DNA of 64,000 nucleotides from Calcarisporiella thermophila CBS 279.70 (taxonomy: Eukaryota > Fungi > Calcarisporiellomycota). Below are positions 45,865 to 64,000 of this stretch, piece by piece (within the stretch, counting starts at the first letter, position 1; every line of letters starts with the position of its first letter). The DNA lies in assembly GCF_041956535.1 (NCBI RefSeq), contig NW_027192209.1, positions 384,092 through 448,091 on the forward strand. The letters are read 5' to 3'. The notes beneath the pieces were generated by a model. The model had not been told where the DNA came from and did not search any database. It saw only the letters and a program-made list of their open reading frames with translations. A program made the translations under genes and the position numbers.

Positions 45865-46836
45865 TTAATTCATTACAGAACGTGCTGCTTCTATTGCATT
45901 TCGCAATTTCGTCTTGTCTTTGGTATAGTGATAATCAAGCTGCTCCTGAGAGTACCGGTATGGGCAGGATTTTCCTCCAACAAAAGTAGCAGCATAATCC
46001 CTCATCTCTACCCATTTTACATAATCATGAGTTTGACGCGAGAAGCCTTGGTGAGTGCCTTTCCCATAAGTCCCGTATGTTTTCAGAATGTCATCCAACA
46101 TCGATTTGAGTTGCTCATCCCCCTGTGGAAATGGATGTGTGAGAGGGGGATCATTGATATCCTGTAGCGGAGGGCCATCTATATCAATAATAACTTTATA
46201 TGGGTATTAATGTTCACCTAGAACTGTGCTACACAAACTTTTCAGTCATTAACTAATTTACCAACTCCTCTCAGAGCAATCCATGGTCCATAGTCTTGGT
46301 GCAAACAAAGAATCTGATTGTAGTAAGCGAGATGTGCTTCATGTGCTAATCTTTGAAAAGCCACAAACCGCTCGTCTTTATCATAGGTATATCGCAGCTC
46401 ATATTTGATATTTTTGGCACCAATAATGTTTTCTACAACTTTCTCAATACATCGAGTAGAGTAGGTATCTACTGGATGATTATCGATACAAATGTCTTTA
46501 GAGGAGACAAGGTAATTTATGAAGATCGGCCAAAAATGTCGCGTATTTCCGATAACTAATTCAAATATTTGATATATCAATTCAATACAAAAATATCTCT
46601 GTTAATTCTTACCTACAGCTAGGGTCGATTTAGAACGACCAAAAGTAGGTAAATGGGCGGATACTGTTGGAGGCAAAGATGTATTGTACCTGAAAGAAAA
46701 ATGTTTAGTAATCGGATCCTAATAAAAGGGGATATGAAATATCTAATTACCTTTGAACTGGGAATGCCTTGACAAGGTCAAAGCCCAACGGGTATAGGAG
46801 TGCTTGAAATTCCTTAGTAATGGAACGCCAGTTCAT
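45865..46836 (-). CDS. MMACHC: Cobalamin-processing enzyme CblC/MMACHC-like (cyanocobalamin reductase / alkylcobalamin dealkylase)
   Basis: Spliced protein shows LYPLGFD...FPVQRYN, TLAVVIGNT, HPVDTY, FQRLAHEAHLAYY, LCLHQDYGPWIALRGVVII, W..MRD, RYSQEQLDYHY; same motif order as animal MMACHC; 3 GT-AG introns. Confidence 0.85.
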
Positions 46837-47197
46837 CAATAAAACTCAGGAACACTATCCATTGAAACGAATTTGAAAATCTGTGACTACTTATAACAAA
46901 AACTACGTGATAATAGAATAGATACTTGGTAGAATATTGAACAGAAAAAACTATTTCTCAAGATAGTCTATCATACGTTAGCTAAAAGAGCAACATACGA
47001 AGGCTGATTTTATGCGTTCCTTTTCGTTTTTGCTCTTTACTTGAATGGTGAATGAAACTCTAGGAGTTATTCAAGAATATATCAGCTGTATTTAAATTTA
47101 AAAATCGTACTATATTGGAGTGAATTAATAAAAACGTATACGTGTAAAAACCAGAGCCGTTAATACTTTTCTCAACTGGCAAATCCCTTTGTTTATT

Positions 47198-49218
47198 ATG
47201 AGCAATTCACATTTTAATAGTGTCGTATCCGAGCTTTCCTTCCCTACTTCTTCTCCCAAGCCTAGAACTCATTTGGAGCGTGCTCAATTCGCATGCACAT
47301 CTCGACTCATTACTTGTTTCATTAATGAGGATTTGATCAAAGGCTATTATCACACCCTCCCCGATAATGGCCTACGCTCTTGGTGTGTTGTTCCCATAGC
47401 TACAAATGGAGATATTTATATTATCAGTTTGAAGAATCCTCCTGTAGGTAGACGTGGGGTCTACAATTTAGAGATAACCCTGCTAGATCCACAGGACTTG
47501 ATGTTTCCTTTGTACAATGTGGAAAGTGGAAAGGTAAACCAGAGGCTTTTATGCTATTAGAGGGCAGTTGGCTCGTGTTTTAAACATTTCTCCTTCTCTT
47601 CGAAAGATTGTTCCTGAATATGATCCAGTCAGCACATTTCGAAAACTATCAAAAGCTGCTGGAGTAGAACGTAAGATATTCGAAGAGCTAGTACCGGAAA
47701 TCGAGAGTACGGTTATGTATATGGGTAGTCTATGATAAACTTAGAGAGATGAAGCCACATATTCAAAAAAATTTTTTTCATACACTAGAACATACTTTCG
47801 CAAACCGAGTTCCGGCCCCAACACTTGCCTCTTCGAGCATCGATTGGGAACAGAGTATTATTGAGGGACACCCACACCATCCAACGCATAAAGCTCGTTG
47901 TGCTGTTCCACCTATTCCACCCATAGCCCCCGGAAGTTTTGAGTTTAACACGATCAAACTTCGTTTTGTCTCTGTCCCTGCAACTGAAATGAATATAAGA
48001 GGCGAGTTTCTCCAGCTTATGTTTCCTTTGCTTGAGTATGCTGGGTTCAAGAACATTCCTCAAGATAAGGTTATTATACCACTACACCCTTTACAAGTTC
48101 CAAACGTGGAAGCTCGCTTCAAGGATCGAGGAATCAATGTCTATCCTCCGGAATTCACAGTTGAAGCACGTGTGCAGGCATCCCTTCGTACCGTCGTTCT
48201 ACCCGAAATTTTGCCTGGGTATGCAATTAAGCTAGCTTGTGGTATTAACATAACCTCGGCAATGCGAACTATTACCCCGTACACCGCACATCTCGGACCA
48301 GGGATTTCACGAGATATTATCCCTCGTCTTGAGATCGATCCCACGGTACTCGCTGTAGAATTAGAGCCGGGAAGTGCCTGGGCACGTCACTCTGATCCCA
48401 ACTACAGCAAACATCTTAGCTGCGTATTTCGGCAAGAGACGAGCGAGATGGACCAGGAGAAGCAGGGTGAAAGAGAGATTATTTGTGCGGCTTTGGTCGA
48501 AAGGGACCCAGATGCCAATGGTTCTGAAGAAAGCGTTTTAATTCGAAGATGGGGTCTCGATACTCGCGAAAAGGCTATGCAATTCCTTAAGCGCTACGCT
48601 AACATTGCATTCCGCGCGTTTCTTCCCCCACTACTTAAAAATGGATTTGCATTTGAAGCCCATCTACAGAATACGAAGGCATGTTTCGACCGGCAGACTG
48701 GCGAGCTAAAAAGCTTCCGAATCCGAGATTTCGGGGGAATTAAATTGCATCAAGAAACACTGGAGCTTACGACCGGGAGAAGGGTGGAAGTACTTCCTGG
48801 AAGCGTTATTGAAGCGGAAAATGCTAAGGACACCTATAAGCTACTCCATCATACCCTAATACAGTGTCATTTACAACAAGTGGTGCGAGCACTACAGCTC
48901 CACGCAGATGGCATTGGCTGGCAAATCGTGCGTGAAGAATTTATACAGCAAGTTCCTAGACAACACCCGCTTTTTAATGCCTGGCTTAACGAGGAGTATG
49001 TTTTGGGCAAATGCTTGATTCGAATGAAATTCGATGGTCTTTCTCGAGATGTGTGTATATTAGTATTTTATTCTAGTTATCTATTTGCGCTTTTAACACT
49101 TTATTTCTACCAGTATATCTACAGGTTGATACCTAACATTTTGCTATATCGACCTCCTACGGACGATCATATCAATACTAATCAAGACATTGCCTATGTG
49201 GCTGCTGAATCGAACTAG
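47198..49218 (+). CDS. NRPS-independent siderophore (NIS, IucA/IucC) synthetase, probable rhizoferrin synthetase
   Basis: WEQSIIEGHPHHPTHKAR, IPLHPLQ, QASLRTV, IKL..GINITSAMRTI, GFAFEAHLQN, IRDFGG, KCLIRM; introns near 47534, 47725 and at 49051-49113. Confidence 0.9.
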
Positions 49219-50922: not shown

Positions 50923-51564
50923 TTACCAACCCCAACTACCGCAGCCATAAGGGACTCCGTACCCGATACTTCTAACGCCACAAGGCGAGATTCCGCCAAT
51001 CCTTCCAAGACCATAAGGCAAGATCCCCTGTCCAATTCCAGCTAAACCATATGCCGAGACACCAAATCCAATCCCTCCCATGCCGCCATATGGTATACCG
51101 TGGCTAATTCCCCCGCATCGCTTCACAACGGTGTTCGTATTAGCAACGTTGTACACATTGGCGTGGTTCTCTGCATTGGTGCATTCGTTAGCTTTGACAT
51201 TAGCAGCAAGGTTCGCACGATGCTTGCAGCAGCTATCCAAGTCGGCACCATTGGCATAATACGCGTTGTTGTAAACCCTAGGATAGCAGCCATATCCTCC
51301 ACATCCGCCATATCCTCCACATCCGCCATATCCTCCACATCCGCCATATCCTCCACATCCCCCATACACATCATATCCACATGGGTAAGACACGCCATAG
51401 GCACATGGGTAGCTCAAACCGTAAACAGATGGATTGCCGATACCATACGCGCCGCAACGTTTGTCGACAAGATTTTCTTCGTCAGTGAGAGGAGTAGCGA
51501 AAGAGGGGCAGACGACGGCAAGTAGAGCAAGAGGGAGAAGTACAAGGGAAGAGTTCTTGAGCAT
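50923..51564 (-). CDS. Intronless secreted Gly/Tyr/Cys-rich repeat protein with two Kex2 (KR) sites and an Asn/Ala-rich core
   Basis: Signal MLKNSSLVLLPLALLAVVCPSFA; VDKR|CG and VVKR|CG; (GCGGYG)4. A TATA box lies between the track's ATG (51681) and this ATG, so 51564 is the likely start. Confidence 0.8.
   Translation of the reverse strand: MLKNSSLVLLPLALLAVVCPSFATPLTDEENLVDKRCGAYGIGNPSVYGLSYPCAYGVSYPCGYDVYGGCGGYGGCGGYGGCGGYGGCGGYGCYPRVYNNAYYANGADLDSCCKHRANLAANVKANECTNAENHANVYNVANTNTVVKRCGGISHGIPYGGMGGIGFGVSAYGLAGIGQGILPYGLGRIGGISPCGVRSIGYGVPYGCGSWGW
51289..51360 (-). repeat. Perfect 18-bp tandem repeat x4 (GCCATATCCTCCACATCC on +), coding GCGGYG
   Basis: Four identical units, read directly. 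Confidence 0.95.
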
Positions 51565-51647
51565 TTTGTCCGAGTTTGTCTTTGATTGCTTTGCTTGTTT
51601 TTTGTTTGAAGTGTTCTGAATATGTGAATTATTTTGCAAAATCCGGT

Positions 51648-51654
51648 CTTTATA
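51648..51654 (-). promoter_or_regulatory. TATA box (TATAAAG) of the Gly/Tyr/Cys-rich gene
   Basis: About 85 nt upstream of ATG 51564, followed by an A/C-rich leader. Confidence 0.55.
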
Positions 51655-52451
51655 TTCTTTCCAACTCGGCACCTCCGTCATTAGTTTTATGCACTTTCAA
51701 CTTGATAATATCTCTTAAACAAGAGAATTCTTATTATACTAATTGATATCAAATGTTATTACCACATATTTGATGAACTCCCCGTCTAGGTCAAATTTAG
51801 GTAAGTAAACAGACTCTTGGAAGCTAGTTTGATATTTCAAAGTATGCACCCTTCGCTGAATGAATTTGTGTTGAGTATAGAACTATACCATTCGTACTAT
51901 CGTGTATGATGACTTTAAACCGCGCAGTTTGTTTCAGTGAGTATTAGAATGCCTTATTCCTCTAAGAGAAATATCAAATAATTCTATATGATTAATCAAG
52001 TAAATATAGGAGAAATTGAGATATTCTGAAGCATCTCTGACTTTGGTAAGTTAAAGCGAACAATACTAAGATAGTAGAGAAGGGCAGAAAACTTTGAAGA
52101 AGCCGAATAGTTTAGCAGTATAAAAAAAATCCTTGAATATATAAAATATTGTACATATCAATATCGGCATTATAGTTCTATAAGGCTTGGTATACACAAA
52201 TTATATTTCGCATATTGTCAAAGGACTTGGCCATTTTGGTTCCGAGTTTTTTCCCCCCCCAACTTCTATTCAATCCATTCAATTTGCCGCAAGGTGACGT
52301 TACCCAAGTAGCCTTTCCTCAACCCAGCAAAAAAAACGCGTTGAATCTCCCTTTATTAGCAGACTTACCAAGTTTTCTCTTTGTTAGCAAGTTCATCTCA
52401 GCCTTTTACTTATCATTTACATTATCATTATTTTTAGCTGCCAAAGCCAAC

Positions 52452-57469: not shown

Positions 57470-59582
57470 ATGGCTACCATGTACAGATCTTCCCGCCGCC
57501 CTCCTAGCTTTCATGGTGATAGCTCTGAAGCTACCTCACCCAATGTTAATGATGCTAGGAAGCGGCAGTCCAAAAAAGATGAGGTAATCATTGATATATT
57601 CATGCTAATGCCATCGAATATTCATTAAGTGTTCAATCACTTTAATTGCAGGCTATTCGAAAGAAAATCGAGCAGGAACTTTCTAAAAAGCGCAACAGCC
57701 CTCGCCAAACCCGCCTTACTTCCAAGAAGCAGATCCAAGGTACTGTGAGCGCCCTGCGGCCATCGTTTGCTTTGACTGTGCGTGAGAATTGCTTGGTTGT
57801 GGAAGCGAGTCAATTGATGGCTGCAAAACGGAGCGATTGTGTGTTGGTGGTGGATGATGAAGATCGTCTCTGCGGAATTTTCACAGCTAAGGATATTGCA
57901 TTTCGATTGGTCGCAGAGGACTACGATGCCAGGTACTGCGAAAATGTTTGCTCAATTCTTCTTTTTTTTTAGATATTGATCTCCTATGTATCATAGAGCT
58001 ACTCCTGTCTCTGTAATCATGACAAGAAATCCAACTTGCGTAACCAGCGATACTCCAGCTCCAGATGCTTTAGAGACCATGGTGCAACGTGGGTTCCGAC
58101 ACCTTCCCGTTTTGAACGAGGATGGTGATGTGGTTGGGCTCTTGGATATTACTAAATGCTTGTTACAAGCTCTGGAAAGAATGGATCGTGCATTTGGGAC
58201 GTCTAGGAAACTTTATGAAGCTCTTGAGGGTGTTCAATCGGAATGGAGTGGCGCTGATCGCAGGTAATTCTGAAATAATTTTGGGTGCTAACTAGCTCAA
58301 TGCTGAAACGAATGCGTGTATCTACTATAGCTTCTTTTCGGTGATGAAGCAGATACGCGAGAAGATGTCCTGCCCGGATCTGAACTCAGTTCTTGATGGA
58401 GCTCAACACGCGGAAGTTGGTGTGCGCACCAATGTGCATGAGGCAGCAAAGTTGATGAAGTCAGTTCGCAAAACTTCTGTTCTTGTGATGGAGAATGGCA
58501 ACATTGCCGGCATCTTTACGTCGAAGGATATTGTATTGCGAGTCATTGCGGCGGGTTTGGCCCCTTCGTCATGTAGCGTTGTGCGCGTGATGACACCGCA
58601 TCCTGACACGGCTACGCCGACCACCACAATTTTAGATGCCCTGAAAAAAATGCACGAAGGACACTATCTCAATTTGCCTGTCATCGACGACATTAGCCGC
58701 GATGTGCTTGGGGTGGTGAATGTGCTCCAGCTGACTTATGCGATGTTGGAGGAAATCAGTAGTATTGAAGGACAAGGTGAGAAGGGAAGAGGGATGGTGA
58801 ACCGATTTTGGCAGTCATTTGCTACGCACGATGATGCGGAATCCGCCAGTGTCACTTCGGACACCGTTGCCTCCACACCAAGTGGGGCTGGGCATGTATA
58901 CCCCCCTACACCCTCAAGTATATCGCGCGCTTCGCGGCCCAATACCTATCCTTCTCGTGACTCGCCAACCCCATCTCAAAATTACCTTCATGAGGAGCAG
59001 GCTGCGGCCGAAGGAGAATACACATTCAAATTCCGGTCTCCAACTGGCAAAATGCACCGCTTTGTTGCCGAGACGAATTCTCTGTCCCACATCCGTGATG
59101 CCATTAAGTCTAAATTACTGAACGAGCGCATCAGTTTGGAGGACCTGGCTGCATCTCTTCACGCTGACACCTCGGATGCAGCCTTAGACGACAGCTGGAT
59201 CGCACTGAGCTACGTGGACGACGACAATGACCACGTGCTGATATCAAGCGACGCCGACCTGATGGACTCTGTACAGGTGGCGCGGAGACAGGGGGCGGGA
59301 AGAGTGATGCTCTATTTGCACGATCACCTGACTCAGCAGCCAATTACCGAGCCTGTTTTAGGGGCTACTGGCGGAGAGCTGGACCACAACCCGACGGCAT
59401 CGCGAGAAGACGAGAAGAGGGAAGTTGAGAAAAAAGCGAAGCGATTGACAGGAAAGAGAGAGGAGAAGCCTGCGCCGTTCGGAGGAATTCCCAACGAACT
59501 CCTTTTGCCGGGTGCGATTGTTGCGTTGGCCGCCACCATTCTTTGCGTATTTGTCGTTGGTCGGTTAACACGCTCGAAGTGA
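57470..59582 (+). CDS. CBS x4 + PB1 + C-terminal TM protein (Mug70-like)
   Basis: RKRQSKKDEAIRKKIE, GTVSALRPS, GIFTAKDIAFR, GFRHLPV, GIFTSKDIVLRVIA, HYLNLPV, FKFRSPTGKMHRF, SYVDDDND, TM tail. Confidence 0.88.
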
Positions 59583-63431: not shown

Positions 63432-64000
63432 TCATTCCTCCAACGTACCTAATGCATCTCCCCATCCTGATGTCTCCACTAGGTCGGCAAGTTTATCAAT
63501 TTCTTTTTCGACCCGTTCATTCCAATCCTTCATCGCTCCTTGCCACCCAATTTGCTCAAGAAAATTCTGGCAATATGTTCTGTTTTCAAACAGCCCATGT
63601 AGATATACCCTATATGCAGTAAAGCATTTAGCATGGTTGTCAACTGGTGAATTGATTTTTTTTTTAAAAAAAAATTACCCGTAAATATTACCATTGCACC
63701 ATCCTAGGCCATCTGGTAGATGTTCATTGGCCCCTTTGCCAGCGATGGTTTTGCCACGATGAATCTCGTAGCCACGGATTTTTACGCTTGAGCCATCCCG
63801 GTCTCTCCATTCTGTTTCCCGCTGACGCGTTGTTTTTTGAGGTTCTATCCAAGTTTCAAGGTCCAGCAATCCCAGCCCTCGTACATCAGCTTCGCCTTCT
63901 ATATGATTCTCGTCATGGATATAGTTTCCCAAGATTTGCATCCCTCCGCACACCCCCATCACCAGCTTCCCATGGCTAGCGAATTCCAGTATCTCCTTCT
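63432..64000 (-). CDS. cobQ: Cobyric acid synthase CobQ/CbiP, C-terminal glutamine amidotransferase domain; 5' part outside the window; one spliceosomal intron at 63610-63678
   Basis: Frame is open from the window edge: KEILEFASHGKLVMGVCGGMQILG..IHDENHIEG...GLGLLDLET...KTT...GYEIHRGKT...GNIYG|VYLHGLFEN...EIDKLADLVE. Catalytic Cys (GVCGG) and His (YLHG) are intact. Confidence 0.88.

What the first reader, a model, noticed from the sequence alone, without database searches (positions are those of the whole stretch)
63432..64000. Intron-containing cobyric acid synthase (cobQ), a vitamin B12 biosynthesis gene domesticated in a fungal nuclear genome
Seen: the minus strand encodes GVCGGMQILG, GLGLL..T...KTT, GYEIH.G.T, G(V)YLHGLFEN and a C-terminal EIDKLADLVE, with no in-frame stop. 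The frame is split inside a Gly codon (TAC GG|gtaatt...catatag|G GTA TAT CTA CAT) by a 69-nt AT-rich GT-AG intron that would give an immediate stop if unspliced. The gene lies about 460 bp from the RAD23 start, so it is not a bacterial contaminant contig. Established: these motifs match CobQ/CbiP, which amidates adenosylcobyrinic acid a,c-diamide to adenosylcobyric acid, rather than CobB/CbiA (GHEFHYS) or GatD (GFENH, HGP). De novo cobalamin synthesis is regarded as prokaryote-only; non-Dikarya fungi are known to use B12, not to make it. Inference: the gene was probably acquired horizontally and then gained an intron. It could belong to a late-stage corrinoid completion or salvage pathway, possibly finishing precursors from bacteria or endosymbionts, or to a larger cob cluster or fusion continuing past the right edge.
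Basis: partly seen in the sequence, partly recalled or inferred. Interest (0 to 1): 0.95.

Follow-up and report, generated by a model that had tools for sequence, protein, structure and literature searches.

The report
Orphan bacterial B12 enzyme in fungus
A heat-loving early-branching fungus carries an intact, intron-containing copy of one bacterial vitamin B12 synthesis gene, but none of the rest of the pathway was found, so it cannot make B12 and may instead use the enzyme to repair damaged B12 that it scavenges.

Summary
The minus strand holds the 3' end of a complete four-exon cobQ/cbiP (481 aa, three GT-AG introns, no stops) in Calcarisporiella thermophila (Mucoromycota), between RAD23 and an RCC1-like gene. 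It passes both CobQ equivalog cut-offs, keeps the catalytic residues, and nests in a Chloroflexota-rich bacterial clade (about 60% identity). No fungal homologue surfaced, so transfer from bacteria followed by intron gain is well supported. MetH, methylmalonyl-CoA mutase, a class II RNR and two adenosyltransferases are present. The gene is an orphan in a B12 user. Best explanation (inferred, about 0.45): it re-amidates hydrolysed side chains of scavenged cobamides. The same bacterial clade often stands alone in genomes without CbiB. Several near-invariant synthetase residues are changed (N46Q, Q93E, R204I), so altered specificity is a live rival. Transferred CobQ is already reported in ascarid nematodes and diatoms; I found no fungal report. 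No reads were available. The scan noted this same stretch in an overlapping window (s1-600657).

The parts
63432..63609 (-). cobQ exon 4 (residues 423/424-481 plus stop), with the YLHG motif holding the catalytic His427
63610..63678 (-). cobQ intron 3, 69 nt, GT-AG, 26% GC, splits a Gly codon
63679..64000 (-). in-window part of cobQ exon 3 (whole exon 869 nt, running 547 nt past the edge), with Cys333 of the class I glutaminase domain. Beyond the edge, in contig C19 coordinates: rest of exon 3 to 448638, intron 2 448639-448700 (62 nt), exon 2 448701-448918, intron 1 448919-448985 (67 nt), exon 1 448986-449166 with the start codon and P-loop
61391..62972 (-). RAD23, intron-rich host gene, downstream neighbour; supports nuclear context
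   Evidence: UBA and XPC-binding Pfam hits
58341..59582 (+). last exon of a CBS/PB1 gene, identical to VTP21DRAFT_3988 of Calcarisporiella thermophila; identifies the host
45865..46830 (-). MMACHC/CblC-like B12-processing gene about 17 kb from cobQ (left end from an ORF, right end approximate; weak Pfam hit); the linkage may be chance

Best explanation
Shown: a complete bacterial-type cobyric acid synthase gene sits in the nuclear genome of Calcarisporiella thermophila, with three spliceosomal-type introns and an intact frame, in a fungus that has B12-using enzymes but no other detected B12 synthesis gene. Inferred: it came as a single gene from a Chloroflexota-rich bacterial clade, and has been kept under purifying selection. 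Inferred mechanism: the glutaminase domain (Cys333, His427) releases ammonia, and the BioD-like synthetase domain uses ATP to activate a free corrin side-chain carboxylate and amidate it. The fungus can neither make cobyrinic acid diamide nor use cobyric acid, so the only substrate whose product it could use is a complete cobamide that has lost a b, d, e or g amide by hydrolysis. The enzyme would then be a B12 repair amidotransferase, restoring inactive B12 acids for MetH, methylmalonyl-CoA mutase and class II RNR. It probably acts in the cytosol (no obvious targeting leader), on adenosylated substrate supplied by the leaderless adenosyltransferase paralogue.
For: Family and intactness; AlphaFold model pLDDT 91 with BioD-like plus class I GATase folds. 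Selection: only 24 of 198 columns at least 95% conserved in the clade differ, against 105 of 155 variable columns. Origin: inside a bacterial clade with SH-aLRT 98-99; all named top hits are bacterial. Orphan status. B12 users present: MetH, MCM, RNR II-like, two PduO/MMAB-type genes, one with a mitochondrial-type leader and one without. The bacterial clade behaves like a salvage enzyme: CbiC in 1 of 11 genomes; no CbiB in 6 of 13, including the complete Engelhardtia mirabilis genome where cobQ stands alone; stand-alone also in L015, L016, L094-L096; in Caldilineaceae it sits with BtuFCD-like uptake, PduO and the remodelling enzyme CbiR. Chemistry: B12 side-chain amides hydrolyse to inactive acids (PMC9822362). 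The CbiP reaction is sequential and dissociative (title of ref. 131 in PMC7242693), so partly amidated corrins can rebind.
Against: I found no paper showing that any CobQ accepts complete cobalamin acids. From my own knowledge, the b, d and e chains point to the same face as the nucleotide loop, which may block binding. In Anaerolineae most clade members (6 of 7) do co-occur with CbiB, often adjacent, so the clade is not a dedicated repair subfamily. Most CbiB-negative genomes are incomplete MAGs. Seven near-invariant synthetase columns are changed, including N46 (invariant in 328 homologues) and R204. MetE is present, so B12 is not essential for methionine. There are no expression data, and selection could partly predate the transfer.
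Confidence: 0.45

Rival explanations
1. Neofunctionalised amidotransferase: the enzyme keeps glutaminase and ATP chemistry but amidates a non-corrin or other tetrapyrrole carboxylate.
For: All 7 departures from near-invariant columns are in the synthetase domain and none in the glutaminase domain (7 of 78 against 0 of 38; Fisher p 0.09). Similarly diverged bacterial members show 0-5, mostly conservative. Long end branch. Actinobacterial CobQ paralogues with changes at the same Q93 and R204 columns sit in atypical CobB/methylase/luciferase-like clusters.
Against: 109 of 116 near-invariant columns are kept, including the EGAGSPAE and DIVN motifs. One bacterial protein with a changed R204 sits next to cbiB in a full cob operon, so that change is compatible with corrin substrates. 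The skew is not significant.
Confidence: 0.2
2. Canonical CobQ in a shared pathway: the fungus amidates cobyrinic acid diamide from bacteria and returns cobyric acid to an associated or endohyphal bacterium that finishes B12.
For: Full CobQ equivalog scores. Endobacterial B12 supply is proposed for Mucoromycota (PMC8085122).
Against: It needs two-way transport of charged adenosylated intermediates. B12-producing bacteria normally have their own cobQ. No partner is known to me for this strain, and the CbiB, CobU, CobS and CobT searches found no bacterial contig in the assembly.
Confidence: 0.1
3. The fungus has a real late completion or salvage pathway like that of diatoms (CobN, CobA, CobQ, CbiZ-CbiB, CobU), and my searches missed the other genes because they are divergent and intron-split.
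For: The same genome search missed the MMACHC-like gene in this window, so negatives are not proof. Diatom precedent.
Against: The MMACHC exon scores only 16 bits even when scanned directly. Short-exon genes of conserved families (PduO, MCM, RNR II) were found. Nine families were negative, and so was a donor-clade CbiB protein at E 0.1.
Confidence: 0.08
4. A relic: once useful, now under relaxed selection and drifting towards loss.
For: Long branch, changed invariant residues, no partner genes, no fungal homologue found, no expression evidence.
Against: 1446 coding nt without a stop or frameshift, three canonical introns, every catalytic residue kept, and a strong bias of changes to variable columns.
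Confidence: 0.12
5. Contamination or a chimeric assembly.
For: No reads could be laid on the locus; single genome.
Against: Three GT-AG introns cannot come from a bacterial contaminant. The gene lies within a 672,666-nt contig between intron-bearing fungal genes. Its GC3 (0.52) resembles neighbouring exons (0.53-0.62) more than most clade members (0.61-0.99, one at 0.42).
Confidence: 0.03

Closest known systems
CobQ/CbiP cobyric acid synthase (TIGR00313, PRK00784), short Chloroflexota-rich clade of about 465 aa
   Same: Domain order, length class, P-loop, EGAGSPAE, DIVN, GVCGG, GYEIH and YLHG motifs; about 58-60% identity.
   Different: Eukaryotic nuclear gene with three introns; no cob partner found in the genome; N46Q, M47I, Q93E, M155F and R204I at near-invariant columns.
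Ascarid (clade IIIb) nematode CobQ/CbiP (bioRxiv 10.1101/236539)
   Same: A CobQ gained from bacteria by a B12-using eukaryote; no functional test is given in that text.
   Different: Animal host; reported as clade-specific family. I could not retrieve those sequences, so shared ancestry or shared residue changes are untested.
Diatom horizontally acquired late B12 genes (bioRxiv 10.1101/2020.01.24.918219)
   Same: Bacterial CobQ in a eukaryote, read by the authors as scavenging and repair.
   Different: Diatoms hold it with CobN, CobA, CbiB(-CbiZ) and CobU; here none of CobN, CbiB, CbiZ or CobU was found.
B12 use in non-Dikarya fungi (PMC8085122)
   Same: MetH, MCM, class II RNR, adenosyltransferase and a CblC-like gene are present here too.
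   Different: That survey covers users and processing proteins only; 'cobyric' does not occur in its text.
CobB/CbiA, CfbB and GatD
   Same: Related glutaminase domain (GATase_3).
   Different: Scores of 54 bits or less, far below their cut-offs; GatD lacks the synthetase domain.

Membership tests
CobQ/CbiP | Whole-protein score above the curated equivalog cut-offs | tested here: met
   TIGR00313 444.3 > 309.9; PRK00784 521.4 > 273
CobQ/CbiP | N-terminal BioD-like P-loop synthetase fused to a C-terminal class I glutaminase | tested here: met
   Pfam PF01656/PF13500 plus PF07685; model matches BioD at Z 18.2 and HisH at Z 20.2
CobQ/CbiP | Catalytic residues: P-loop GKS, Lys43, Glu137, Asp151, Cys333, His427 | tested here: met
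   All kept and near-invariant in 328 homologues. Roles are assigned from my own knowledge (Asp151 corresponds to Salmonella CbiP Asp146).
CobQ/CbiP | Conserved synthetase motifs KxQNM, SQV and NKFRGD (observed conservation; not a formal family criterion) | tested here: not met
   Altered to KGQQI, CEV and NKFIGD; N46 is invariant in all 328 homologues. The functional effect is unknown.
CobQ/CbiP | Phylogenetic placement inside CobQ | tested here: met
   Inside a bacterial CobQ clade, SH-aLRT 98 and 99 in two quick trees; no CobB rows included; donor unresolved
CobQ/CbiP | Four ATP- and glutamine-dependent amidations of adenosylcobyrinic acid a,c-diamide | not testable with these tools
   Needs an enzyme assay or complementation
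De novo or late cobalamin pathway | Ring synthesis, chelation and first amidation genes (CbiC/CobH, CobN, CobB) | tested here: not met
   No match in the own genome; CbiD, G, J, K and X not searched
De novo or late cobalamin pathway | Downstream CbiB, CobU, CobS, CobT, or remodelling CbiZ/CbiR | tested here: not met
   No match; sensitivity caveat
Domesticated horizontally transferred gene | Integrated among host genes and carrying spliceosomal introns | tested here: met
   (assembly only)
Domesticated horizontally transferred gene | Spliced transcript and reads spanning the flanks | not testable with these tools
   No run was listed
Domesticated horizontally transferred gene | Absent from related fungi | tested here: inconclusive
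   No fungal name among the top 120 hits of two searches, and no close metagenome locus; lists are capped, many rows are unnamed, and a divergent fungal copy could rank lower

The most novel reading that the evidence does not exclude
Stand-alone CobQ in eukaryotes (this fungus, probably ascarid nematodes) and in bacteria without CbiB is an undescribed metabolite-repair enzyme that re-amidates hydrolysed complete cobamides, giving a fungus the ability to turn inactive B12 breakdown products back into coenzyme.
Probability: 0.4. Interest if true: 0.85.

Novelty: new variant of a known kind. Interest (0 to 1): 0.62.

Why it matters
Fungi were only recently recognised as B12 users, and how they obtain it is stated as open (PMC8085122). 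This is, as far as my searches reach, the first corrin-ring biosynthetic gene in a fungal genome. It does not mean the fungus makes B12. Its value is as a clean test case: an orphan CobQ whose canonical product is useless to its host makes the idea of B12 side-chain repair testable with one enzyme and a few substrates. A positive result would also explain orphan cobQ genes in ascarid worms and many bacteria, change how cobQ is scored in B12-pathway predictions, and offer a possibly thermotolerant enzyme for recovering degraded B12.

Tried and rejected
Sequencing runs: none was listed. Spliced model: I searched exon 3 by reference and left out any search with a joined sequence of my own; full-length work used P0001, the annotated protein that the database returned. 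Cluster or fusion past the edge: rejected. CobB, CfbB or GatD identity: rejected. Close relatives in GTDB genomes and metagenomes by P0001-specific words: none. Synteny with Umbelopsis around the CBS gene: not conserved, uninformative. A precise donor: unresolved polytomy in both trees; the careful tree did not finish. The idea that the donor clade is always orphan: rejected, Anaerolineae members usually have CbiB. The idea that loss of R204 proves a non-corrin substrate: rejected. Blanche 1991 and the published worm paper were not held. Literature searches for fungal CobQ found nothing.

Full report
Observation. The minus strand of 63432-64000 encodes the C-terminal part of a glutamine amidotransferase exactly as described, split by a 69-nt GT-AG intron at 63610-63678, ending 459 nt before the RAD23 start codon. 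The window is contig C19:384092-448091 of a 28.2 Mb, 116-contig assembly. A neighbouring CBS/PB1 exon is identical to VTP21DRAFT_3988 of Calcarisporiella thermophila on a contig of the same length, 672,666 nt. A genome of that species was released with the thermophilic fungi study PMC11393059.

The whole gene. Reading past the edge shows two more exons and two more introns. The four exons (181, 218, 869 and 178 nt) sum to 481 codons plus stop and reproduce the genome's own annotated protein P0001. The introns are 67, 62 and 69 nt, GT-AG and 26-34% GC. Each falls inside a conserved motif where the protein aligns to bacterial CobQ without a gap. The upstream neighbours are an RCC1-like gene and a PHO84-like transporter, so there is no fusion or cob cluster. 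I searched exon 3 by reference and did not build or search a joined sequence of my own; P0001 came from the database. No sequencing run was listed, so splicing and assembly continuity rest on sequence alone.

Identity. P0001 passes TIGR00313 (444 bits) and PRK00784 (521 bits); CobB, CfbB and GatD models give 54 bits or less. The model (pLDDT 91) has a BioD-like synthetase and a class I glutaminase domain. The P-loop, Lys43, Glu137, Asp151, Cys333 and His427 are kept. Changes avoid conserved columns: 24 of 198 highly conserved columns differ against 105 of 155 variable ones, which fits purifying selection, part of which could predate the transfer. Seven near-invariant columns do differ, all in the synthetase domain: N46Q (N in all 328 homologues), M47I, S92C, Q93E, M155F, R204I and L209M. 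The domain skew is suggestive only (p 0.09), and similarly diverged bacterial members show 0-5 mostly conservative departures.

Origin. The best hits are bacterial at about 60% identity, mostly Chloroflexota where named, with Spirochaetia, Fibrobacterota, Planctomycetota, Myxococcota and others. Two quick trees place the protein on a long branch inside this short-CobQ clade (SH-aLRT 98 and 99) with no resolved sister. No fungal homologue appeared in capped, partly unnamed lists, nor in metagenomes. GC3 of 0.52 resembles neighbouring host exons. Transfer from bacteria followed by intron gain is the best reading (about 0.9).

Pathway context in the fungus. Not found: CbiB/CobD (also with a donor-clade protein), CobS, CobU, CobT, CbiC, CobB, CbiZ, CobN, CbiR. 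Found: MetH, methylmalonyl-CoA mutase, a class II RNR-like gene (68), MetE, and two intron-rich PduO/MMAB-type adenosyltransferases, one with a mitochondrial-type leader and one apparently without. An MMACHC-like gene lies 17 kb away, and a weak periplasmic-binding-fold hit resembles CBA1. One caveat: the genome search missed the divergent MMACHC-like gene, so absence is 'not found'. Short-exon genes of conserved families were detected. The fungus therefore uses B12 and, on this evidence, can neither supply CobQ's canonical substrate nor use its canonical product.

What the bacterial relatives show. Of 11 genomes with this clade, 1 has CbiC, 3 CobB, 7 a CobN/Mg-chelatase match, 10 CobS and 9 PduO. 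CbiB is present in 7 of 13, against 33 of 39 class-mates with the longer CobQ type. Some Anaerolineae hold it in a late cluster with CobB, CbiZ, CobN, cobalt uptake and CbiB. Caldilineaceae hold it with BtuFCD-like uptake, PduO and CbiR. Elsewhere it stands alone among unrelated genes, including the complete Engelhardtia genome, in which CbiB was not found. The clade is thus corrinoid-linked, typical of salvagers and apparently moved repeatedly as a single gene. It is not exclusively orphan, and most negatives come from incomplete MAGs.

Mechanism. CobQ/CbiP adds four amides from glutamine with ATP (PMC7242693). From my own knowledge these are the b, d, e and g chains, on adenosylated substrate. 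The reaction is sequential and dissociative (title of ref. 131 there). B12 side-chain amides hydrolyse to inactive mono- to hepta-acids (PMC9822362). The only amidation whose product this fungus could use is repair of such complete cobamide acids. I put this at about 0.45. The chemistry is inherited from family knowledge; the substrate is inferred by exclusion and is untested. I found no report that CobQ accepts complete cobalamin acids, and the nucleotide loop may hinder binding. The changed synthetase residues could be an adaptation to a substrate without free f and other carboxylates, or a sign of a new substrate (0.2) or of decay (0.12). Shared-pathway (0.1), missed-pathway (0.08) and artefact (0.03) readings are weaker. 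Bacterial CobQ variants with R204 changed occur both in a full cob operon and in atypical clusters, so those changes do not decide the matter.

Comparison with what is known. Transferred CobQ is reported in diatoms, with partner genes and read as scavenging and repair (10.1101/2020.01.24.918219), and in clade IIIb nematodes (10.1101/236539). The fungal B12 survey covers users only (PMC8085122), and searches for fungal CobQ returned nothing. By sequence it is a CobQ family member; one set of conserved motifs is not met and activity is untested. It is not a member of a B12 synthesis pathway.

Verdict. A real, intact, probably horizontally acquired orphan cobQ in a fungus: a new variant of a known kind. 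Interest 0.62.

Noticed in passing
window 45865-46830 (-): Intron-rich MMACHC/CblC-like gene 17 kb from cobQ; weak Pfam hit (E 0.008) and missed by the genome search. Linkage to cobQ may be chance.
   Followed up: partly
window 47189-49218 (+): IucA/IucC (NRPS-independent siderophore synthetase) family gene with a 489-aa open frame (Pfam E 7.6e-25); origin not examined.
   Followed up: partly
L130 and L131 (G000:C5:1193950-1194900 and C7:960070-961230): Two intron-rich cobalamin adenosyltransferase paralogues; the C7 copy has a mitochondrial-type leader, the C5 copy appears to lack one and could serve cytosolic class II RNR or CobQ.
   Followed up: partly
L139 (G000:C1:1210100-1211850, +): Secreted-type protein with a weak periplasmic-binding hit and a C-terminal membrane helix, resembling the B12 uptake protein CBA1.
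   Followed up: partly
L134:6551-13655, L135:8941-14727: Actinobacterial CobQ paralogues with an unannotated N-terminal domain of about 200 aa and changed Q93/R204 columns, clustered with CobB, tetrapyrrole methylases, a luciferase-like oxidoreductase and (in L134) PduO; tandem copies in Symbioplanes. Possibly an undescribed tetrapyrrole pathway.
   Followed up: partly
L008:2787-13825, L009:6425-13899: Chloroflexota (Caldilineaceae in L008) cluster of BtuFCD-like uptake, optional CobB, CobQ, PduO, CbiR and a 343-344 aa protein with no family hit; a candidate cobamide repair and remodelling module.
   Followed up: partly
L002:5200-5400 (-), upstream of the cobQ start: One or two intron-like GT-AG segments and an out-of-frame upstream ATG in the putative 5' leader; could be 5' UTR introns or a regulatory uORF.
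   Followed up: no
window 50923-51681 (-): Gly/Cys/Tyr-rich repeat protein with a signal-like segment and dibasic sites, perhaps a secreted structural protein.
   Followed up: no
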